From Salisapilia sapeloensis CBS 127946 (Eukaryota > Protista > Oomycota): 64,000 nt of DNA. The stretch lies in contig JAADVB010000005.1 in assembly GCA_023334545.1 (NCBI GenBank), positions 62,001-126,000 on the forward strand, read 5' to 3'. Below are positions 44,237 through 57,259 of this stretch, in pieces. Made by a program: the position numbers and the translations under genes. Under the pieces are notes generated by a model. The model was given only the letters and a program-made list of their open reading frames with translations, was not told the origin of the DNA and made no database searches. Position 1 is the first letter of the stretch. Every line of letters starts with the position of its first letter.

Positions 44237-47200
44237 CTATGTTTTCTCTCTCCTCTCTGGTCTCTTCAACTCCAAATCGTGCTTCTTCAGCAAAATCGGT
44301 TTCTTCCACGACGATTCTCCTGTGACTTTATCAAAGTAGTAGCACTCTCGATTTACTGTATCCCACAGCTTTTCAACACGGTTATGGAGATTTCGATGTA
44401 GCTCAAGTCGAGCATGTACATATTGAAAGAAGTTTTGAAGTACACTTGCAGCTTCTTCACGATTGATGATGTGGTACTCTCGTTGGCGTTGTCGCCGAAC
44501 TCGTACAAACATGCTTGCCAACAACGCAGGCTTTTCCCATCGTACATCTCCAGTTTTCGTGTTGTGGTAGTAAAAGTGACGGGTCACAGGATCAAATATC
44601 TGCTCATACGCATCTGCAAGAAGTTCCTGTACCCGCTTCTGAGCCATCCTTGATCGTAGCAACGATTGAATGGCTGTCGCTGCAGTATCCGGTGTCAATT
44701 GTTTCCGGTAGTTTTCCAAGTGCTGCCATTTTCGCTTGCGTCTTGCCCTTTCACTCATTGTCGACTGCAGAAGACGAGATGGGTCCTCAAGGTCACGGGT
44801 ATCGACTAGCTCTGGTAACTGCTTTCTTCGACTCGTAAATGTGTTTGGTGCCACCGACATAGCATCAAAGGTTAAATCCCAGTGTCCAAGTAAAAGTGGT
44901 TTAATCCAGGAAGATGTTCCCAATACCCGATCGTAATAGTATGACTGCTGACTGCTATTATCTACTAACTTTCGATAACGATGGCGAAGCCGCTCAAATA
45001 AATGTTGGCGGGTAAGATATTGCCGAGCTAATGCCTGGATTGTGGAGGCCGCATAGTCCATCGGATCTTCGTACAAAGCCATCCTTTGCTCTCTCCGAGC
45101 CTTAATTTCACGGTATCTCTTATTCGTCATTCGTTGTTTGCGACTGCGTCGAAGTATCTTGTTGCCGCGTTCTCTGAACAGTATTGGCTTAGTCCAGCTC
45201 GATTCATACGTGAAAAGATTGTAGTAGTAATGTCGCTTAGACACCGTGTCGTATATCTTTCTGTAGCGAGAACGAGCTAAGCGACGTATAGCATTCAAGG
45301 CGCGATGAGTCCGGAACGCACGTTGAATCATTTTTGCGGCTGCATCAGTTGACATGCGGGCTAAACGCTTTCGCCGTTGTATTTCAATCGGATCACCCAA
45401 ATTATACAAGCGTTTACACAATGCCGGTTCCTTCCAAATGATGGCAACTCTTTTTTCGTTACCACTCTCTTTGTCCTGTTCATTTGCCAACGTGTCGAAG
45501 CTATCGGCTTCCTCTGGCAATAGCGCCCGTTTTCGTTTGTAATAAACCTCTCCTGTCTCCATGTTACAGTGCTTGTCGTACATTTCCATAAGTTTATGCC
45601 TGCACAACTGTCGCGCTTGACGTTGTCGCCAATAGCTCTGCAATACGACTGCAGCGTCTTTTTCTGTCAGTGGTGGGAGTATAATTGGTATTTCATCCGG
45701 ATCTCTCATAGGGATATCGACATTGGATGGCAAACCTTTCGGCAGTTCCCACGAAGTCCGATTCGTCCAGTGATTGAAGTAAAAGAATGTGTCGTGCTTG
45801 ATACTATATACCTTTTGGTAGTGACCTGCCTTTAACCGCTGCATAAACCTTCGTGCACGCTTGGCACGATACATACATTGTAGCTTTCGAATTGCTTCAT
45901 ACTCGCTGAGTGGTATCTCTGGGGGCCTTTCGCCGTGAAGATCTCGATCGTGACTGCACTGCCTGCAACGCCATATCTTCAACGGAGCAGGATTGAACCC
46001 ATCGCACCTCCAGCAGACTCGGCACAAAGGATGAAGCAAAGTTTCCATGTCAATCGCATCAATGTTTGCTTCTACTGTTTGCTTCTTCCGTTTTTGTGCA
46101 ATTCGATCCACCGCTGGTGCTAAACGTGTCGGTGGTAACGGCTTTCGATGGTCCCTCTCGCCACTGAAGCATGAAGAGGTAAGCGGAGGTGGGGGGATAC
46201 GGCCCAGATCCAAACGAGGCACTTCGACGGGCTTTACCCGCCACAACCGTGCGACTTCCTCACCTTCATAGCTTGCTTCAGTGCGAGCAGCAGTGTTAAA
46301 GACCGTAAAATTTCGCCCACAAGATAGTGATACGACTCGATTAAAAGTTCGATAGTCCGGTAGTTCTAGTCTAGTTGGTGTCGGAGAATAACCCACGTAG
46401 CTTCCCCATGTGTACACTCGATTTTGCGAAGTAAGTACTGCTGTGTGGTGCTGCCCACAGGCAATTTGAATGGCAAATTCCTCATCTAATACAATTTTGT
46501 GTGGTATTCGAACTACTTGAGGTTCATGCAGCAGTTGCGTCGATCCGGTTCCAAGCTTACTTGTGTATACATCAGAGATAATAAGATGAAAGAGATTGAT
46601 AAAGGTTTAAAGTATGCTTACTTGGCCGTAGATACCAGTTCCCCATGTATAGACCCTGCCACCCAAGTCTATCGTTGAATTTCTCTTTTCTCGTGCAATA
46701 CAAGCATTGTGCCAAGTACCACATGCTATATCAACAGCAATCCTGTCGCGAAGACAGCCCTCCACACGTGATGGCATTCGCTTATTCTGGCCAGCAAACT
46801 TTGTCCCATGTCCTAAACGGCTTCCATCGTTACACCCCCAAGTATAAACGCGCCCATCTTTCGACAATGCTAGCGTGTGTAGAGCTCCACAAGCAACTTT
46901 GGTTATTGGAATACACTGAAGGCCATCTACTTGGCAATAGTAAAATGGTTTTGGAAACAACTCCTGGACCGTTCCTTTATCTTTAAAGCCGGTAAGAGAA
47001 GATGGAGGCTCTTTTTTGGCAGCAGATGATGGAAGAGATAAAGCTGCAGTACCTCCGAGCGATGCTGTTGTTGGGGCTACATGAAATTTACCTAGTTGGC
47101 CGAACGTATTATTTCCCCAGCAGAAAACTACACCATCATCCCCAGCGACGCCATTGCAGATTGCTACCCCATGCAAGCTCCCACATGCAATCCCAACGCT

Positions 47201-48328
47201 CTTGTACCGCGAAATCGATAGCACAACGGTTGGTGGATTACTTGTCACTTCGTCTGCGGTCTCAGCGCCAAACCCGAGTTCGCCGTGCGGATTGTCACCC
47301 CAAGAGAAGATCTCATCATCGGTTAAAGCGAGTCCATGTGAATCACTTGCTTGGACATCTCGCACATGCTCCGTCTTAAGAGACCGAAGGAATACTGGAG
47401 GTACGAGCCACTCCGGCGCTCGCTCGGTTTTAGGTGGTGGCGTCGGCACAGATAGCGATGGGCTGTACTTGCCCAATGCAACTGCCGTCTTTCGAATAGT
47501 TTTAGATGCAGTCATACTAGGTGCTTTTGTTGTTGAGGATGGTAATGTGATAGCTATACCCTTGGGTGACATTAGAGGTTTTGATGCTGCAACGACTTGA
47601 GCTTGTGAAGCGGACCCTCCAGATCTGCATAGCCATGAAGACCCTTCATCTGCATCAATTGCGTATACAGCATCAGAGTTGGATGACTTCAAAGTAGGAT
47701 ATACATCAAGTTCACAAGGTTAGTTCGAGGTATCGAAATCAATATTAATTTTGTCCACCGTACTGCAGAGATCCGAGTGAAATGCTTTCCTTGCAGTGGC
47801 CGAATTTCAGTCAACTCTGCATCAGGACGTGCTTCACAATAGTATACATCTCCTTGAGCTAATGCCGCAACAGGTTTAGTTTTAGCAATTGCATTGAGAA
47901 CAATCAAAAGTACCTTTGGCGTGTTTGTGTCGGGCAACAGCAGCGGCCTGTCCTGCTAGATCATTCGCTCGAGCATGCTGATCTAGCCATCTTTGAATGC
48001 GCCCTATGAGAAATATCTTTTTGCCGGTGGATGGCAGGTTTAAGGACAATGCTAGCAAGCGAAGTTCGTCATATGACTTGGTCCGAAGGTCAATGCGACG
48101 CCAGTGACCTCGTGCACGAACACGATGGAAAGCTTGAAGCGATCGAAAAGTGCTCTTAACATCTGCACGAGTCATTTGAAAAGCACTTCGCAGTAGATAG
48201 CTCCGGAACCTCTTTTGAATCATCGTTGCAGCAATTTCCCGCCGGCGTTTAGCCCGGCCAGGTTTCCATCCTACATCCAGCTTTCTTTTGACTTTTTTCC
48301 GACCGTCACTTGCACCACGATTCCACAT
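44237..48328 (-). CDS. Multidomain protein: IQ + SAP + RCC1 repeats + CxxC/His zinc-finger-like motif + six IQ-WW modules
   Basis: ORFs 47882..48328 (IAATMIQKRFRSY; DLRTKSYDELRLLALSLNLPSTGKKIFLIGRI), 46607..47692 (RCC1: FSWGDNPHGELG, IACGSLH, FCWGNNTFGQLG, VACGALHT, YTWGCNDGSRLG) and 44237..46417 join through GT-AG introns (…GIYGQ|LGTGSTQ…IACGQHHT…VYTWGSY). Confidence 0.8.
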
Positions 48329-49868: not shown

Positions 49869-52800
49869 TTAAAAGACACCGACGCACCAGCGTTGGTACC
49901 GGTCATACCAATTCGTTCGCCAATTATCCAACGACGCATCAATCAGATCGTGGACAAAGTCTTCACAGGCGCTAATATCCAAATCCGGTCGGAACCGATC
50001 CGCCAGCTTCTCCACGGCAGCAATCGGGTCTCCTCCAAAGCACGGAAGATGTTCATTCCCAGGAATCATCATCTCCACCAGCAACAGCAGTCGATGCCGA
50101 TACTTTCTCGCGACAAGGAACGCTCGTAGACACAGCGATCGATACCTTCTAAACGTCGCTGAGCGAGGCCCGCCCATGAGTTCGACAAACTCAGTCGTGA
50201 GTTTAAACGGCGCCTGTTCAAAGTCCATATTCCCCGGATTATTCCCCAAGAAGAAACCAAAGTCAATATGGATGATATGTCCTTCTGCATCTACGAGCAA
50301 ATTGCCATTATGCCGATCCTTCACCTGTAGCAAGTAGCAGACGATCGAGTATCCCGCGAGACTACTCACAAAGTTCGCTCGAGCGCGTTTAAAGCCAGAG
50401 GATCCACGTGGACCAAAGCGTCTCGTGAAGAAATCTAACAGACTCGTGTACTCGAGATCATTGCGTTTCAGCGAGTCGATGGAAATCGTATCCGAGATAG
50501 CTTCTACTAGTCCTGCAGTCGCTGATGTTGCGATCACATCGTAGGGACGTAAGAAGACCGAGAGCTTGGCTTCATCAAAGAGTTTCGAGAACTGTCGAAT
50601 CAACTGAGACGCAAGTTGCTCCTGTCTCAAATCGTCATTCGCTTTGACGATGACAGGCAAGAGTCTCCATCCCGGGAGATCACCAAAGGGAGAAGTCGCT
50701 TGGATACGTCGCTCCTTCTCTGCCCAGCGCTCTTTGAAGATGACAGCTGGAGGTTGATCTTTACGACGAACCATGTCCATGGACGGAGAGAAGACACTGG
50801 ATGCATCTTCATCTTCCGCTAGTTTCGAATCCCTTTCGGATAAAGACAGAAGGAATCGATCCGTGCTGTCGTATCGAGCTAGTCCTCTCGGAGACGACGC
50901 TTTCGAATCTGCTGATCGAGGCGACAGTTCATCACCATCCGACACTTGTGCCCACGTCATGTCGTTCGTCAAGTCATTCGAGTCCTGCGGCATATCCTGA
51001 CTCCATACGTTGCCACTATCCTGTGCATACGAGTTGTTCGATTGGAATGTATGTGGTGTCTCGGACGTCGCTCGTCTCGGGAATGGTTCGATAGATGCAC
51101 CTGCGCCTATCTCGAGTCTCGACATGGCAGACGATGATCTTGAATTCGTTGCCGAATGGCTTTGCGATCGACCCATCGTCGGCTGGGACAATGGTGGTGC
51201 ATCCTCTGTCTTCTGTTCAAAGTCATCCGTCCTCCTGCGTGGACGCTGTGGTACTATATCTTTATCCTGTTCTCCTATCCACTGTCCTCCAGCAGTCATA
51301 CCGACAGACGCACGTCGTACGAGGTTATCTAGAAAGCCATTCAATATCTCCGTTGACTGTGCCATGGACGAAGAGATCGTATGTGAAAGAGATCTCATGC
51401 GTGGAATACGTGCTGGTTGACTTTCACTCCAGAAACCAAGTGTCGAGTCGTCAGGTGTACCATTGTTAGTCGTAAAGGCACTGCTTATATGACCCTGACG
51501 AGGTGTCAGCATATCATGATGTCCTTCGCTTGTTTGTGAATGATCGAATAAAGATCCGAATTTAAAACGATTCTTCTTGTCTGCTGTAGCTTTTGACAAA
51601 TGGTCCGGAGACTCATAGTCAATGACTTCAGCACATAGGAGAAAAGGGACACGCTCCCTCGTACTAAAGGTAAAGCTTTCACCGACGTGAATGTGTTTAA
51701 TCGTATGACGAGAGTTACCCACAGGGATGTAGAGTGCATTGCTTGGAAGGTATTGACTCTGTAAGTCTTCCAACCACGCACGTAGCATGTCGTTACGACG
51801 ATTGATACTGATGGAACGGAGGTTGGATGAAACGTTCGCGAGAGCGTTCAAGAAAGTCGTCTCCTGTTCAAACGGATTCCTTTCTTCCTCTTCACTTTCG
51901 CGACTCGAATGGCCACTTTCGAGCGACATACGAGCGTCTGCAAATGTGTTGTACTTTTCTTCCGTTGACGTTAACAGCGCTTCGGATTCTTGACTACTGC
52001 CAGAATGACGAGATGGACGACTTGTCTGTTGAGCTCTCTGCTTCTGTAGTCGATGTTGCAGCATCGTATTCGCTGCTTGTCGAGCGATACCACGTGCTGG
52101 ATCTAGTCCTCGATCAGATACTTCTTCAATCAGCATATTGACTCGCTTTGAGTTCTCGTCACTCGCAAACGACTTGTTGTCGAGACAGTAGGACTGCAAG
52201 TACCACAACATCTTGTGCGCAAACACATGCGACCTATACACCTCGTTAGATATTAGTCAAAGTGTGTCAAGTAGAGCTTACGTACGTGCTGCATTTCTCC
52301 AAGAGAAGGATACCGAGCTGCGGACTTTGCATAAATGCTCCGAGTAGTAGGAAACTACACATCTGAGGAAGATAGAACTCGAATTCAGACGGATGCTGTT
52401 CATATGCGATAGTCAGTCCTTCCACAGCGCCTAATTCATTCTATTAGACAAGTCGATCTATGTTTATACACTAGAAGAGCATACCGTCTCGATGAGCGTA
52501 TAAACGCACGAGCGCTTCGAACGTCGGGTCTGTCTTTCGTCGTTGAAACTGCTTGACGAGACGCGTCCACTTTTGCTGCCATCGTTCTCTTCGAGATAAA
52601 CCACCTTCCTCCTCTAGCTCTTCTTCCGTCGGAACGGCTAGTTTTTCATTTAAAACGTCTTGGAGCAACGAATCGTCTGCTAATCTAGCTCGACTCTTGT
52701 TGAGCCGGAGGAAGTAGACCAACTGGATGGAGCAACTAAGCACCGCGAGCGTCGAGAGTAACAAGAGGTACTGCAGTCCCCACTTTTGCTGTCGTAAGAG

Positions 52801-53118
52801 TGCAAAGCTGTCTTTTTCCTGCCAATACACCAAGACTGGGGAGATGCTAAAAACTGTCAAGGTCAATTGAAATAGCACAACGAGGAGGAGGAAACGGCGC
52901 GTCGCCGGCGCACGCTTCCCCGCTCGACGCACAGCGAGGAACCAGATGAGACGAGCAACGGACAGGACAACGACTGCACACAAGGACTGGTGAAAGTGTC
53001 GAGCGCTTTGCAGATCATGCTCGACGAACGCATAGTCGCGATACAAGGCTGGCAGACCAAAGTACACGACGGGTATTAAGAGCTCTGAGAAGACGGCGGA
53101 GAGGCCGAACGCTCCCAT
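49869..53118 (-). CDS. Phosphatidylinositol 4-kinase (type III-beta/PIK1-like) with an N-terminal four-TM segment; 3 exons, 1047 aa
   Basis: Kinase domain: IVKANDDLRQEQLASQLI, SLAGYSIVCYLLQVKDRHNGNLL, HIDFGF, FEQAPFKLT. LKU-like FEFYLPQMCSFL…SHVFAHKMLWYL. Exons 53118-52485, 52430-52286 and 52233-49869 splice in frame through 54- and 52-nt GT-AG introns. Confidence 0.9.
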
Positions 53119-53378
53119 ACTAAGCTTTAATATCTAGATGAACCTACGACTTGGAGATAAATAGGGACGGCGTGAAGGACAGCAAGGTGGGCGTGGTAGA
53201 GAAATAGATCGCTTGCCTTGCTTTCGACGTTGCAAAACACCCGTGATCGACAAAAATAGCATCATATCACAACAAAAGATATAGAAATGAACACCGCATT
53301 ACGAGACATCAACGCACTTCGGCGCTTCAACACCCGACCAGCCACTTGCCATGGCAACAAGACATGTATTTACCAAGT

Positions 53379-54112
53379 CTATCGAGGACCGTACTTCCCT
53401 CCGCCACGGCCTCCACCTCGACCGCCGCCACGGCCGCCTTGCCATCCACCTGTAGGAGGCTTGGGCTTCCCAGCTAGCTCTACCTTGATCGTCTGCTCTC
53501 GGAACTCGGAGCCTAATGTCATACAAAAGTTAGTACAAGTACCAGTGGTATTGTATGGAGAGAAGTACCATTGAAAAACTGTGGCGCGGTGCGTGCAGCA
53601 TTCGCGTCTTCATACGTGATCACAGCGTCTCCTTTGACCGCACCACTATCGTCCGTGTAAATCTTGATCTTGAATGGCCATTGATCCTTAAATCCTCGCT
53701 TCTGCTTTTCACGAGCAATGACGCCGAGTGCACCAAACGTTTCTTGGAGTTCATCCACTGTGACGTCTGTGGGTAGACCAGAGATGTAGATCCTGGACCA
53801 GGTCGGATCCTTTTCAGCCTCTTTTTTCGGATCCCAATCATCCGACGTCTCCGGCTGCTGTTCCCGTGGAGGATTGTCTTCGCGCGGCTTTCGCACTGGA
53901 GATTGCCTCCGACCATCATCCCGATCCCTTCTGCTGCGATCGCGATCACGATCACGGTCCCGATCGCGAGACCGTTCTCGAGGTCGAGGCCGTTCCCGAG
54001 CTTCTGGAGATCGGTCGCGACTGTGACGCCGATCTCGCGACCTGTCAGACCTACCAGACCTACCACGGTCACGGCTGCGACTGCGTGGACGATCCCGACT
54101 ACGTTCGCTCAT
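53379..54112 (-). CDS. RNA-binding protein with RS/RD-rich N-terminus, FET (FUS/EWS/TAF15)-type RRM and RGG tail
   Basis: RIYISGLP…FGALGVI…KIKIYTDDSGAVKGDAVITYED…AARTAPQFFNG | SEFREQTIKVELAGK…GGRGGGRGGGRGGGKYGPR*. Confidence 0.85.
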
Positions 54113-54416
54113 TCACAACAGTAGCTTGTAGTACACTTCCCAACCTTGTTGGCTGTGCGCTATGTACATGACATTTTCCTATTTCTATCCATTTCATATA
54201 TACTCGGTACATGTACATATAAATAAATTGCAAGCTGTCCGGCGTATTGTTATCGAGACAAATTGACACAAATTACTTGTGGACGAATGAAAGACCTAGA
54301 GTCAGCGCGTTTTACGACATAAACCGGAAGGCGAGTCCATAAAAAGCGAAGGAAGAGGAAGAAACGCCTCGTGCCTCCCCACCACCTCCTTTCGATCCTT
54401 TTAGACGGAGCTCAAG

Positions 54417-55791
54417 ATGACAAGCGAGACGGATGAAAAGACACGAAAGCCAGAAGGTATGCACTTGTCTTCACTCTTCTTACGGCTGTATATGCTGATC
54501 TATATGGCTTGCAGACACACCGTTTAAGCAGCAAAAGCTCAAGGCGTGGCAACCCATTCTAACGCCAAATTGGGTCATTGGCACCTTTGCTGTCGTCGGT
54601 CTTATCTTTATACCCATTGGCGTCATTCTCCACTTTGAATCAGAAGGGGTATATTTCATGTGCATGCATATCATTCTATCTGTATACTTAGGTGCATTTT
54701 GGATCTAGGTGGTCGAGTACTCGATCCAATACGATGGAAATGGAATGAAAGATGCGAACTCGAGTAATATTGAAAATCTCGGGAGTGGATGCTACTTGGA
54801 TGAGGAAGATGATGGAGATACGTTTAACGTGACGAAGAGAGGGTGTCTCGTGAACTTTAAGATCGACAAGGACATGGTGGCTCCAGTCTACGTCTACTAC
54901 CAACTTGACAACTTTTATCAGAACCACCGTCGATACGTCCAATCTCGGAGTGACTCGCAGCTGCGTGGCAAGTATGTCGAGGACCCAACGAACTGTGATC
55001 CGATGAAAGAGACGCCAGACAAAGTCTACAAGTACAACAGCACAGGCGATCGTATCGATGATGATAAGAAAAGTTACCGTCTCAACCCATGTGGACTCAT
55101 CGCCAACAGCCTTTTCAATGGTACAAAACTTTTCTATCAAGTAACGACACGAGTGCTAACGACTTGAGGTATAGATATCTTTTGGGTGAACAGTCTGACG
55201 CTTCCGAATGGCAACATCTACTACCAAGAGAACGAGTACGATGGGGATGACTTGGTCAACGTCATGGATCAGACTGGCATTGCATGGAAAACGGATGTAG
55301 ACACGAAGTTTAAGAACTTGCCGGAAGATGAACGCAACGAGGAGGAAGAGCTGTACTTGTGGGAGAATGAAAAGTATCGGTACATCGTCCCGAAGTACGA
55401 AGGACAGGAGCCGATTGCGAACGTGACGGCATGGACGAAACCGGCACCATCCTTTGGTGTCCAGAACGAGCACTTTATTGTATGGATGCGGACGGCTGGG
55501 CTTCCAAGCTTCCGTAAGTTATACGGTCGCATCGATCAGGACTTGGATGCTGGCACGGAACTTCAGTTCCTCGTCTCAAGCAACTTTGTCGTGTCGACGT
55601 TTGAAGGCAAAAAGTCGCTCGTGATATCGACGACGTCGTGGTTTGGCGGTCGAAACCCGTTCTTAGGCATTGCCTACATTGTCGTGGGTGCATTGTGTAT
55701 GGTTCTCGCCATCCTCTTCTTTGCCAAGCATAAACTCAGTCCTCGGAAGCTCGGTGATACTAGTTACTTGGTCTGGAAGAACAACCATTAA
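54417..55791 (+). CDS. CDC50: CDC50/LEM3 family P4-ATPase beta subunit (4 exons)
   Basis: TPFKQQKLKAWQPILTP, VYVYYQLDNFYQNHRRYVQSRSDSQLRG, PCGLIANSLFN, NEHFIVWMRTAGLP.FRKLYG, SWFGGRNPFLGIAYIVVG. Confidence 0.96.
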
Positions 55792-55977
55792 ACTCTCTTT
55801 CTCTACTTTTTCTTTCTTTTCGACTTGTAGTATGTCCTATTGGAGATTCCTATGGAAGAAGAATGGAAATTACATTTGTACATGCTTCCAGTTAGTCTTT
55901 CTCTTACTTTGTATCATGTGTCTGGAGGATCTCATCGACGTGACGGTTCATGAACTTTATCAGAGAATTCCTCAGAC

Positions 55978-57259
55978 ATGGCGACGGACTACGCTTTGGT
56001 CGATCGAATTGGCAATGGGTCTTTCGGAGAAGTTTGGAAAGCGACGAGGATCGTGGATGGAGAGACTGTCGCGATTAAAAAGCTACGAGTACCGGATGAT
56101 GAACGTTTGAAGACACTCCCAGCGGCTATCTTCCAAGAGATCGAGGCCATGCGCCAGTTGGAACACCCCAGTGTACGACTAGAGCTTTATTTTGTCCATA
56201 TCCACCTCTTAGAGCTACTTCTAGATCGTCAGGTTAGAAGGCATACACGCTGAAGACTCTTACGTGTGTCTGGTGATGGAGTACCTGCCATTGGACTTGC
56301 ACACGGTAAGACTAGTCGACGCATACATATCGGAGACTTATCTGATGAAGCGTACTGGTGGGCTGTAGGTCATACACCGAAGCAAAGTCAGGTTTGATGA
56401 AAATGAGATTCGATGCATTATGAAAATGCTTTTGGAAGCTGTCGCCTGCTGCCATCACCACTCAATCATGCACCGGGTACGGGCATACCGCTCAGGCAGA
56501 AAATTCGACCAGCTATAACTTTCTTCTACGTAGGATATAAAGCCTGGGAACCTACTGCTTCACTTGGATGGAACGATGAAGCTGAGTGACTTTGGCCTTG
56601 CTACAGTCTACGTCGGCTCCGACGTCACTTACAATCACCAAGTTGCGACGAGGTGGTATCGGGCTCCCGAACTCTTGTTTGCAAGTAGGTGCTATGACCC
56701 AAAGGTGGACATTTGGTCCGTCGGCGCCATCTTCGCCGAGTTACTTAACCATGCTCCCCTCTTTGCTGGTCTCAGTGACATCGATCAACTCAATCGTATC
56801 TTTCAAGTATTAGGGAGCATCGAAGACCAATGGCCAGTACGTTTTAAAGACTACAAGCCCAGCTGCCATCTTACACATTGTGATCCTAGGAAGTAGTTCA
56901 TCTGCCAGATTACCACAAAGTAAGCTTCCCAGAATATCGATCCATCCCATTCACAGACGTGCTCCCAGACGCGAGTAAAGATGCACTCGATCTTTTATCA
57001 CGACTCCTAGCGCTAGATCCAAATCAACGTCTTTCCGCTAGCCAGGTATAGCTCCATCTCATCCTCTTTCTCCACATTTGTCTTAATGGAAACTTTGTAG
57101 GCACTACAGCATCCTTACTTGTCCTCAACGACACCCAAACGTCTTCTCTCCTTCCCTAGCGACCTTTCTATTGTATCACCTGAAAGCAGCAACCACTCTA
57201 TTGATGAACAAGAGTGGTCTCACCTCTTCTTTAACAACCCACTCCAAGCAACAGATTGA
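55978..57259 (+). CDS. CDK20: Cyclin-dependent kinase 20 / CCRK-like (multi-exon)
   Basis: IGNGSFGEV, VAIKKL, IMHR|DIKPGNLL, KLSDFGLA, HQVATRWYRAPELLF, VDIWSVG.IFAELLN..PLF.G.SDIDQL. The HQVATRWY loop is typical of CDK20. Confidence 0.8.

What the first reader, a model, noticed from the sequence alone, without database searches (positions are those of the whole stretch)
49869..53118. Integral-membrane PI4-kinase: a four-TM module spliced onto a PI4KIII-beta-type kinase
Seen: the ORF track shows a separate 215-aa membrane ORF (52471..53118). A GTATGC donor at 52484 and an AATTAG acceptor at 52431 join it in phase to a hidden exon (…LYAHRD/GAVEGLTIAYEQHPSEFEFYLPQMCSFL…), which splices in phase to the kinase ORF, giving one 1047-aa protein. 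Exon 1 has four hydrophobic stretches (LSAVFSELLIPVVYFGLPAL; SLCAVVVLSVARLIWFLAV; FLLLVVLFQLTLTVFSISPVLVYW; LQYLLLLSTLAVLSCSIQLVYFL). Known: animal PI4KB and yeast Pik1 are soluble enzymes recruited by Arf1, ACBD3 or Frq1/NCS-1, and oomycetes have other receptor-lipid-kinase fusions (GPCR-PIP5K). Inference: this is a self-anchoring, possibly sensor-coupled PI4K and a further member of that fusion repertoire.
Basis: partly seen in the sequence, partly recalled or inferred. Interest (0 to 1): 0.72.

Follow-up and report, generated by a model that had tools for sequence, protein, structure and literature searches.

The report
Membrane-anchored PI4-kinase beta, oomycete PIK-J
The three-exon gene is real and encodes a type III-beta PI 4-kinase with four membrane helices at its N-terminus, but it is the orthologue of the catalogued oomycete gene PIK-J, and similar N-termini occur in a diatom-like and a brown-alga PI4KB, so it is conserved and shows no receptor features.

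Summary
Observation confirmed. On the minus strand, exons 53118-52485, 52430-52286 and 52233-49869 join in phase across GT..AG introns of 54 and 52 nt. The product is 1047 aa.

Contiguous orthologue proteins align collinearly across both junctions. The only gap is exactly the 18 codons of intron 1. The last 16 residues of exon 1 already belong to the PI4KB accessory (PIK) domain, so exon 1 cannot be a separate gene.

The kinase is type III-beta: 285 bits to human PI4KB against 179 to PI4KA. The N-terminal 195 aa form a four-helix bundle in a topology that puts the kinase in the cytosol.

It is not new. More than 50 public oomycete proteins carry the same module, including P. infestans PIK-J (PITG_13775).

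It is probably not oomycete-specific. Diatom-like and brown-alga PI4KBs carry a similar N-terminal module, and they are the nearest clade in the kinase tree. The same genome also keeps a soluble PI4KB paralogue.

The module has no GPCR or other family signature and only short outer loops, so "sensor-coupled" is unsupported. An acidic residue in helix 1 and an Arg in helix 2 are conserved, which hints at more than a passive anchor.

I found no paper describing the anchor. The scan had read this same stretch twice before, and no other DNA.

The parts
52485..53118 (-). Exon 1 (634 nt, ATG at 53118): four-helix membrane module, cationic juxtamembrane helix, and the first 16 residues of the PIK accessory domain
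   Evidence: Aligns end to end with orthologue N-termini.
53044..53115 (-). Membrane helix 1 (aa 2-25), with a conserved acidic residue at position 12
   Evidence: Kyte-Doolittle segment 1-26. AlphaFold2 helix 2-25. Position 12 is E in 49 and D in 3 of 52 sequences.
52921..52980 (-). Membrane helix 2 (aa 47-66), with invariant Arg56 and Phe60
   Evidence: R56 and F60 are each present in 52 of 52 sequences.
52819..52905 (-). Membrane helix 3 (aa 72-100), preceded by the K/R-rich cytosolic loop 64-76 and opening with invariant Thr73-Arg74
   Evidence: The loop holds 6 K/R and no D/E.
52708..52779 (-). Membrane helix 4 (aa 114-137). The helix runs on into the cytosol to about aa 160. Conserved Gln132, Asn140 and Arg143.
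52537..52593 (-). Amphipathic cationic juxtamembrane helix (aa 176-194) with invariant W180, K183, W184
   Evidence: AlphaFold2 helix 176-194. Hydrophobic moment 0.57, net charge +7, and conservation.
52486..52533 (-). Start of the PI4KB accessory (PIK) domain inside exon 1 (aa 196-211, the TDPTFEA..RLYAH motif)
   Evidence: The equivalent stretch of orthologue P0020 aligns with the soluble paralogue's PIK domain, which matches PF21245 just under its cut-off (26 v 27 bits). The motif is also conserved in the proteins from outside the oomycetes.
52431..52484 (-). Intron 1, 54 nt, GTATGC..AATTAG, phase 1
   Evidence: It appears as an exact 18-codon gap with three stops in tblastn of contiguous orthologues.
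52286..52430 (-). Exon 2 (145 nt), the core of the PIK domain (the EFEFYLPQ motif)
52234..52285 (-). Intron 2, 52 nt, GTACGT..TATAG, phase 2
   Evidence: Orthologue residue 250 ends at 52288, residue 251 is the split codon, and residue 252 starts at 52232.
49869..52233 (-). Exon 3 (2365 nt including the stop): end of the PIK domain, a long Ser/Thr/Gln-rich linker, and the catalytic domain
50064..50657 (-). PI3/PI4-kinase catalytic domain (PF00454), with the VIVK, DRHNGN and IDFG motifs present
   Evidence: PF00454 at 141.9 bits against a cut-off of 27.1. Best PDB match is human PI4KB. The motifs are read in the translation.

Best explanation
This is one three-exon gene for a 1047-aa integral-membrane type III-beta phosphatidylinositol 4-kinase. 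It is the orthologue of oomycete PIK-J.

Shown: the gene structure; the type III-beta kinship; intact catalytic motifs; a conserved N-terminal module of four hydrophobic helices; its fusion to the kinase in all full-length orthologues; a single copy of the module in this genome; and a second, soluble PI4KB paralogue in the same genome.

Inferred: the four helices span a membrane with both ends in the cytosol. The K/R-rich loop between helices 2 and 3 and the K/R stretch after helix 4 point to that topology. Helix 4 continues into the cytosol. A strongly cationic amphipathic helix then lies on the membrane surface. After it come the PIK helical domain, a disordered linker and the kinase, all on the cytosolic face.

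The enzyme would therefore be tethered permanently to one membrane and make PI4P there, without needing adaptors such as Arf1, ACBD3 or Frq1. The soluble paralogue would cover the recruitable pool. The membrane is probably in the Golgi or secretory system, by analogy with PI4KB and Pik1, but this is untested.

The conserved acidic residue in helix 1 and the invariant Arg in helix 2 suggest a specific packing or partner site rather than a featureless anchor. The architecture is probably older than the oomycetes.
For: Gene model: phases, lengths and GT..AG introns. Five contiguous orthologues are exactly collinear. Exon 1 ends inside the PIK domain. Exon 2 has no in-frame ATG before its conserved PIK motif.

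Kinase type: PF00454 at 141.9 bits. Human PI4KB scores 285 bits against 179 for PI4KA.

Module: four Kyte-Doolittle segments and the positive-inside charge pattern. AlphaFold2 helices at pLDDT 82.5 and pTM 0.67. Conservation across 52 distinct sequences, with R56, P23, S45, F60, R74, F105, N140, W180 and K183 present in 52 of 52 and E or D at position 12 in 52 of 52.

Distribution: a profile search of 1.84 billion representatives found only 17 hits. Every hit long enough to reach that far, except the fragment P0055, runs on into the PIK motif. The module is present in every full-length PIK-J-type protein fetched and absent from all soluble PI4KBs. It occurs once in this genome.

Paralogue: a 1116-aa single-ORF soluble PI4KB on contig C823, 62% identical in the kinase domain.

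Tree: the membrane-type oomycete clade has support 100/99 and the soluble clade 99/92. The membrane clade joins the clade holding all other helix-bearing PI4KBs at 95/90.

Module outside the oomycetes: three to five N-terminal hydrophobic segments, and in most of these proteins the same Asp in helix 1 and juxtamembrane Trp helix; the Arg in helix 2 is in all seven. hhalign gives probability 85% and E 6e-6, against E 0.06-0.29 for reversed-sequence controls.

Transcript-level hints: an MMETSP transcript-derived protein of 1495 aa carries both module and kinase. A full-length oomycete ORF lies on mRNA-sized contigs from two sequencing runs.
Against: There are no RNA reads for this genome, so splicing rests on comparative evidence. 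No dedicated membrane-topology predictor was available, and insertion and topology are inferred from hydropathy, charge and a predicted model. An alternative internal promoter giving a soluble isoform cannot be excluded: several metagenomic and other database models outside the oomycetes start just after the module, although most look like ORFs truncated by introns. Module homology between oomycete and non-oomycete proteins rests on a moderate profile score over membrane helices. Which membrane it sits in, and whether adaptors are really dispensable, are untested. Exons and contiguous orthologues were used instead.
Confidence: 0.78

Rival explanations
1. The four-helix module is a sensor or regulator, not just an anchor. 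It would detect a luminal or extracellular cue, a lipid or a membrane property, and gate kinase activity.
For: Charged and polar residues inside the predicted membrane core are conserved: E/D12, R56 and Q132. So are residues in both short outer loops: D35, Q44, S45, F105, R109 and W113, across 52 sequences. The Arg is in all seven non-oomycete N-termini aligned and the Asp in five of them. A passive anchor would not need these.
Against: There is no Pfam or profile similarity to any receptor or channel family. The outer loops are about 20 and 14 residues. Structural matches are generic four-helix bundles: Foldseek E above 1, and Z 10.6 in the structural alignment search, where about 13 is needed for helical bundles. 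Buried charge pairs can also be purely structural or an oligomerisation site.
Confidence: 0.15
2. These are two separate genes: a small 215-aa membrane protein and a soluble PI4KB that starts at an internal ATG. The in-phase junctions would be coincidence.
For: Mechanical ORF calling gives two ORFs. Some public annotations split them the same way, for example the adjacent Pythium insidiosum tags PINS_up007896 and PINS_up007897.
Against: Exon 1 ends with conserved PIK-domain sequence that the soluble paralogue also has. More than 40 orthologues, several of them on one uninterrupted ORF in assembled contigs, carry both parts. The gap in the orthologue alignment equals the intron exactly. The module is never found alone, except as truncated fragments ending at an intron position or a contig end. 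The first in-frame ATG downstream lies inside the PIK domain.
Confidence: 0.03
3. The hydrophobic helices do not span a membrane. They would form a soluble or peripherally bound helical bundle.
For: Only hydropathy and a predicted model were available. Structural search also returns soluble four-helix bundles at similar Z.
Against: There are four segments of 20-26 residues with mean Kyte-Doolittle hydropathy of 1.8-2.3, and the flanking charges follow the positive-inside rule. The pattern is conserved across oomycetes at only 23-45% identity, so hydrophobicity itself is under selection.
Confidence: 0.04

Closest known systems
Oomycete PIK-J (P. infestans PITG_13775 / XP_002899470; Plasmopara halstedii PHALS_12332), listed among the oomycete phospholipid modifying and signalling enzymes
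   Same: Orthologue. It has the same N-terminal module (27-45% identity), the same PIK-linker-kinase layout, about 56% identity over exon 3 and 69-81% in the kinase domain, and the same neighbours.
   Different: Only lineage divergence. This genome's copy has two short introns, and their positions are shared with several other lineages. I found no paper in the searchable library that describes the membrane helices of PIK-J. Meijer and Govers 2006 could not be read.
Canonical PI4KIII-beta (human PI4KB, yeast Pik1, plant PI4K-beta)
   Same: The catalytic domain is closest to PI4KB, at 285 bits. The PIK/LKU helical domain lies upstream of a disordered linker. The catalytic motifs are present.
   Different: By textbook knowledge the canonical enzymes are soluble and recruited by Arf1, Rab11, ACBD3 or Frq1. 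This protein has four predicted membrane helices and a cationic juxtamembrane helix in place of the adaptor-binding N-terminus.
PI4KBs outside the oomycetes with N-terminal membrane helices (Ascophyllum nodosum P0130; P0139/P0160, whose cluster holds a Ditylum brightwellii member and an MMETSP transcript)
   Same: Three to five N-terminal helices. Arg in helix 2 is in all seven aligned, and most also have Asp in helix 1, a Trp-containing juxtamembrane helix and then the RL(F/Y)A PIK start. They are the nearest clade in the kinase tree.
   Different: Too divergent for the oomycete HMM to detect. Loops and linkers are longer. The homology is probable, not proven.
GPCR-PIPK 'GPCR-bigrams' of oomycetes and Dictyostelium RpkA
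   Same: A lipid kinase carried on an N-terminal multi-spanning membrane domain (PMC5784254, PMC6033456).
   Different: Those have a seven-helix GPCR domain and a PIP 5-kinase catalytic domain. This protein has four helices with no GPCR signature and a PI3/PI4-kinase-fold catalytic domain. They are unrelated fusions.
Four-helix (tetraspan) membrane proteins: synaptophysin/synaptogyrin (MARVEL), MS4A/Fc-epsilon-RI-beta, tetraspanin, claudin, connexin
   Same: An up-down four-helix bundle. Synaptophysin scores Z 10.6 with rmsd 3.4 over 130 residues, and CASP-like proteins score TM 0.48.
   Different: No sequence relation. The scores lie within the range of generic helical bundles. No large outer loop is present.

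Membership tests
Type III-beta PI 4-kinase (PI4KB/Pik1) | PI3/PI4-kinase catalytic domain above the Pfam threshold | tested here: met
   PF00454 at 141.9 bits against a cut-off of 27.1, residues 526-723 of exon 3.
Type III-beta PI 4-kinase (PI4KB/Pik1) | Catalytic domain closer to PI4KB than to PI4KA or the PI3Ks | tested here: met
   Human PI4KB 285 bits, PI4KA 179, Vps34 135. It falls among PI4KB-like proteins in the tree, with PI4KA-like P0036 as outgroup.
Type III-beta PI 4-kinase (PI4KB/Pik1) | PIK/LKU helical accessory domain upstream of the kinase | tested here: inconclusive
   Orthologues score 27.5-30.3 bits on PF00613 against a cut-off of 31. The region aligns at 48% identity (E 4e-24) with the paralogue's PIK domain, which itself scores PF21245 at 26 bits against a cut-off of 27. 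A profile of the region found no PDB sequence. It is homologous by alignment but just under the curated thresholds.
Type III-beta PI 4-kinase (PI4KB/Pik1) | Catalytic Lys, DRHxxN catalytic loop and DFG motif intact | tested here: met
   VIVK, DRHNGN and IDFG are read in the translation. Which motifs matter comes from established knowledge of PI4KB.
Type III-beta PI 4-kinase (PI4KB/Pik1) | Soluble enzyme recruited to membranes by adaptors | tested here: not met
   Four predicted membrane helices at the N-terminus. Adaptor binding itself cannot be tested here. This is a trait of the studied members rather than a formal family criterion.
Type III-beta PI 4-kinase (PI4KB/Pik1) | Converts PI to PI4P | not testable with these tools
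   Needs an enzyme assay.
Oomycete PIK-J orthogroup | Conserved N-terminal four-helix module directly followed by the PIK domain and kinase | tested here: met
   Alignments. The HMM hits all full-length members. Collinearity.
Oomycete PIK-J orthogroup | Groups with PIK-J proteins and apart from the soluble paralogue in a kinase tree | tested here: met
   18-row clade at 100/99 support, with the window inside a 12-row clade at 99/93.
Oomycete PIK-J orthogroup | Conserved gene neighbourhood | tested here: met
   The RRM gene upstream and the IQ/RCC1/WW gene downstream match the extra parts of merged public models from Peronospora, Aphanomyces and P. ramorum.
GPCR-bigram / GPCR-PIPK | Seven-helix GPCR domain | tested here: not met
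   Four helices and no Pfam hit on exon 1 at E up to 0.1.
GPCR-bigram / GPCR-PIPK | PIP 5-kinase catalytic domain | tested here: not met
   The catalytic domain is PF00454, not PIPK.
MARVEL / MS4A / tetraspanin-type four-helix families | Sequence-profile membership or a clearly outstanding fold match | tested here: not met
   No Pfam hit. Foldseek E above 1. Best Z 10.6 in the structural alignment search, below the level of about 13 that is common for helical bundles. ESM Atlas feature scores are 0.83 or lower.

The most novel reading that the evidence does not exclude
Type III-beta PI 4-kinases with an integral four-helix membrane module form an old clade shared by oomycetes and ochrophyte algae, and the literature has not described it. 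In this reading the module, with its conserved intramembrane acidic-Arg pair and conserved short outer loops, is a regulatory device that couples a membrane or luminal cue to PI4P synthesis rather than a passive anchor.
Probability: 0.15. Interest if true: 0.75.

Novelty: new member of a known kind. Interest (0 to 1): 0.45.

Why it matters
Type III PI 4-kinases are taught as soluble enzymes whose location is set by adaptor proteins. A conserved clade that is built into the membrane, next to a soluble paralogue in the same cell, is a natural experiment on how fixing the kinase in place shapes PI4P pools.

PI4P at the Golgi drives OSBP-type lipid exchange. The oomycete ORP1 exchanger is blocked by the compound oxathiapiprolin (abstract of PMC13538951, listed; not read further). 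PI4KB is, from my own knowledge, a validated drug target in other parasites. A lineage-specific membrane module on an otherwise conserved kinase is therefore of practical interest.

There is also a practical annotation lesson. Several public models split, truncate or merge this gene.

Tried and rejected
- Pfam on exons 1 and 2 returned nothing.
- A word-index protein search with exon 1 alone found no stand-alone relatives of 116-369 aa.
- A profile of the junction region against PDB sequences gave only a spurious coiled-coil hit.
- Foldseek against the PDB gave no match with E below 1.
- The ESM Atlas gave only generic bundles by shape, and by features scored 0.83 or lower, below a useful level.
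- The wide structural alignment search returned generic four-helix bundles only.
- Eight literature searches and a look through several oomycete papers and supplements gave only the name PIK-J and its gene ids, with no description of membrane helices. These covered PIK-J, PITG_13775, and PI4K combined with oomycete, stramenopile and transmembrane. Meijer and Govers 2006 is not held.
- The poly(A) check on the mRNA-sized contigs was inconclusive.
- Rejected: a GPCR-bigram relation; two separate genes; an oomycete-specific invention.
One script read the exon 1-intron 1-exon 2 stretch through, without removing the intron, only to find where a retained intron would stop translation. Another script computed only exon lengths and the two junction codons.
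- The organism could not be named. The tree places it among peronosporalean oomycetes, near Globisporangium and Phytophthora.
Full report
**What is in the sequence.** The minus strand holds a 215-aa ORF (52471-53118) and a 790-aa ORF (49869-52241) with a PI3/PI4-kinase domain.
- Exon 1 ends at 52485, followed by GTATGC.
- Intron 1 is 54 nt and ends AATTAG at 52431.
- Exon 2 runs 52430-52286.
- Intron 2 is 52 nt, GTACGT..TATAG.
- Exon 3 starts at 52233.

The exons sum to 3144 nt, which is 1047 codons plus a stop. The junction codons read HRD-G-AVE and KCS-T-SHV. Both introns carry CTAAY branch-like motifs, and intron 1 contains three in-frame stops.

Exons were searched by reference, and contiguous orthologues stood in for the whole protein.

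**Is it one gene?** Three independent lines say yes.
- *Orthologues carry both parts.* A search with exon 3 returned about 1000-aa oomycete proteins, with the P. infestans one named "phosphatidylinositol kinase (PIK-J)". Their first 180-205 residues align end to end with exon 1 and run straight into exon 2 and exon 3 sequence.
- *The alignment is exactly collinear.* I ran tblastn of five contiguous orthologues onto the window. The only gap is 18 codons, equal to intron 1. Orthologue residue 250 ends at 52288, residue 251 is the split codon, and residue 252 starts at 52232.
- *Exon 1 ends inside the kinase's own domain.* Its last 16 residues (TDPTFEA..RLYAH) are already part of the PI4KB accessory domain. 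The same genome has a soluble PI4KB paralogue, a 1116-aa single ORF at L013:2227-5577. Its PIK domain matches PF21245 just under the cut-off (26 v 27 bits) and aligns with this very stretch in orthologue P0020.

Exon 2 has no in-frame ATG ahead of its conserved motif. Intron positions are also shared: several truncated public or metagenomic models stop exactly at the intron 1 site or read through the intron 2 site.

There are two hints at transcript level. A full-length oomycete ORF lies on mRNA-sized contigs from two sequencing runs. An MMETSP transcript-derived protein carries both module and kinase. No RNA data exist for this genome itself.

**What kind of kinase?** PF00454 scores 141.9 bits. 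The best PDB sequences are human PI4KB at 285 bits, ahead of PI4KA at 179 and Vps34 at 135. The VIVK, DRHNGN and IDFG motifs are present. The PIK domain scores just under Pfam's threshold in orthologues. "PI4KIII-beta-type" is therefore correct.

**The N-terminal module.**
- *Helices.* Hydropathy gives four segments: 1-26, 42-66, 74-99 and 115-137. AlphaFold2, run with a 14-sequence alignment, gives mean pLDDT 82.5 and pTM 0.67, with helices 2-25, 47-66, 72-100 and 114-160, a short loop helix 29-40 and a helix 176-194.
- *Topology.* The loop 64-76 holds six K/R and no acidic residue, and K/R residues follow helix 4. Both ends should therefore be cytosolic, which puts the kinase on the cytosolic face.
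- *Juxtamembrane helix.* Helix 176-194 is amphipathic, with hydrophobic moment 0.57 and net charge +7. This is typical of a helix lying on an acidic membrane surface.
- *Conservation.* Across 52 distinct sequences, R56, P23, S45, F60, R74, F105, N140, W180 and K183 are invariant, and position 12 is always E or D. An acidic residue in helix 1 and an Arg in helix 2 are unusual for a plain anchor.
- *Outer loops.* They are only about 20 and 14 residues long.
- *Family.* No Pfam family matches. Foldseek finds nothing with E below 1. The structural alignment search gives synaptophysin at Z 10.6, then LRRC8, PRPH2/ROM1, sarcospan, connexins and Fc-epsilon-RI-beta. The tool's own notes call this range common for helical bundles. 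It is a generic four-helix membrane bundle.

**Distribution.**
- A profile of the module was searched against 1.84 billion representative proteins and found 17 hits. Every hit long enough to reach that far, except the fragment P0055, continues into the PIK motif.
- No stand-alone relatives turned up in the word search.
- The module occurs once in this genome.
- Locally, the HMM hits every full-length PIK-J-type protein fetched. These come from Phytophthora, Peronospora, Hyaloperonospora, Bremia, Peronosclerospora, Nothophytophthora, Globisporangium, Pythium insidiosum, Lagenidium, Achlya, Saprolegnia, Aphanomyces and Thraustotheca. It also hits the truncated Albugo model.
- It hits none of the soluble PI4KBs.
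- A divergent copy on a 38-kb metagenome scaffold is also followed by a kinase ORF on the same strand. That kinase is the first branch of the oomycete membrane-type clade.

**Beyond oomycetes.**
- A hydropathy scan of the other PI4KBs fetched showed three to five N-terminal helices in Ascophyllum nodosum (P0130), in P0139/P0160, whose cluster holds a Ditylum brightwellii member, and in several unnamed proteins.
- Aligned, most show the same pattern: Asp in helix 1, a conserved motif after helix 4, a Trp-containing juxtamembrane helix, and then the RL(F/Y)A start of the PIK domain. The Arg in helix 2 is in all seven.
- A profile-profile comparison of the two module alignments, cut before the PIK domain, gives probability 85% and E 6e-6 over 101 columns. 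Reversed-sequence controls give E 0.06-0.29.
- A careful maximum-likelihood tree of 79 kinase domains gives these clades:
  - the oomycete membrane-type clade, supported at 100/99;
  - the oomycete soluble clade, supported at 99/92, which includes this genome's paralogue;
  - a 95/90 branch joining the membrane-type clade to the 28-row clade that holds all the other helix-bearing proteins, apart from the soluble clade.
- Many "helix-free" rows in that 28-row clade are visibly truncated models that start inside helix 4 or at the Trp helix.

The fusion is thus probably older than the oomycetes, although the module homology is probable rather than proven.

**Mechanism.** The best reading is a permanently membrane-tethered PI4KIII-beta working beside a soluble, recruitable paralogue. 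Which membrane it sits in is unknown. Golgi or secretory membranes are an analogy only. The conserved buried charges and loop residues keep a regulatory or partner-binding role open, and I give that about 0.15.

**Novelty.** The gene is the orthologue of a catalogued class. PIK-J equals PITG_13775 in P. infestans and PHALS_12332 in Plasmopara halstedii (Additional file 11 of PMC4594904). Full-length models are public. Eight literature searches and several papers and supplements gave no description of its membrane helices. The founding inventory, Meijer and Govers 2006, is not held, so I cannot say it is undescribed. Relative to textbook PI4KB the architecture is a variant. As a finding in this window it is a new member of a known group.

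**Earlier notes of this scan.** Two earlier notes, s1-296351 and s1-303642, are reads of this same stretch.

Noticed in passing
L013:2227-5577 (-) = G000:C823, about 52726-56076: A second PI4KB-type gene in the same genome. It is a single 1116-aa ORF with a Ser-rich N-terminus and no membrane helices, has sub-threshold matches to PF21245/PF00613 and a full PF00454 match, and is 62% identical to the window's kinase domain. It is orthologous to the soluble oomycete PI4KBs at 79-85% identity.
   Followed up: yes
window 53534-53863 and 44276-48304 (both minus strand): The gene order RRM gene, membrane PI4K, IQ/RCC1/WW gene is conserved across oomycetes. Merged public models from Peronospora belbahrii (P0011), Aphanomyces astaci (P0042) and P. 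ramorum (P0023) contain the neighbours' sequences.
   Followed up: partly
public proteins P0024, P0022/P0046, P0007, P0107: Public models of this gene are often wrong. The Albugo candida model starts inside helix 4. Pythium insidiosum has the gene split into adjacent tags PINS_up007896 (module) and PINS_up007897 (kinase). P. kernoviae keeps only about 80 residues of the module. Lagenidium giganteum has it merged with an upstream protein-kinase gene.
   Followed up: partly
proteins P0148, P0141/P0147, P0129, P0101, P0110, P0134: Several helix-free protist PI4KBs near this clade start with Cys-rich N-termini such as MGCCSSCC, MSFLCRCC and MACCRK. These look like acylation motifs. If so, fixed N-terminal membrane attachment by lipid or by helices may be a recurring theme in these PI4KBs. 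This is untested.
   Followed up: no
L014:10001-12901 (+), ENA metagenome scaffold of 38 kb: A divergent membrane PI4K, with the module ORF followed by the kinase ORF, on a eukaryotic scaffold of unknown organism. Its kinase branches first in the oomycete membrane-type clade, so it may come from an early-diverging oomycete or a sister lineage.
   Followed up: partly
L013:5997-9785 (-): Next to the soluble paralogue lies a 1262-aa ORF with Stealth CR1-CR4 regions, a Notch LNR domain and a weak EF-hand match. From my own knowledge, the Stealth-plus-Notch-LNR combination recalls GlcNAc-1-phosphotransferase (GNPTAB).
   Followed up: no
G000, whole genome: PF00454 gave 19 matches in a 22.4-Mb assembly, all above the curated cut-off. 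This fits the large PIK repertoire of 17-27 genes reported for oomycetes in supplement tables of PMC3681718 and PMC4594904.
   Followed up: no
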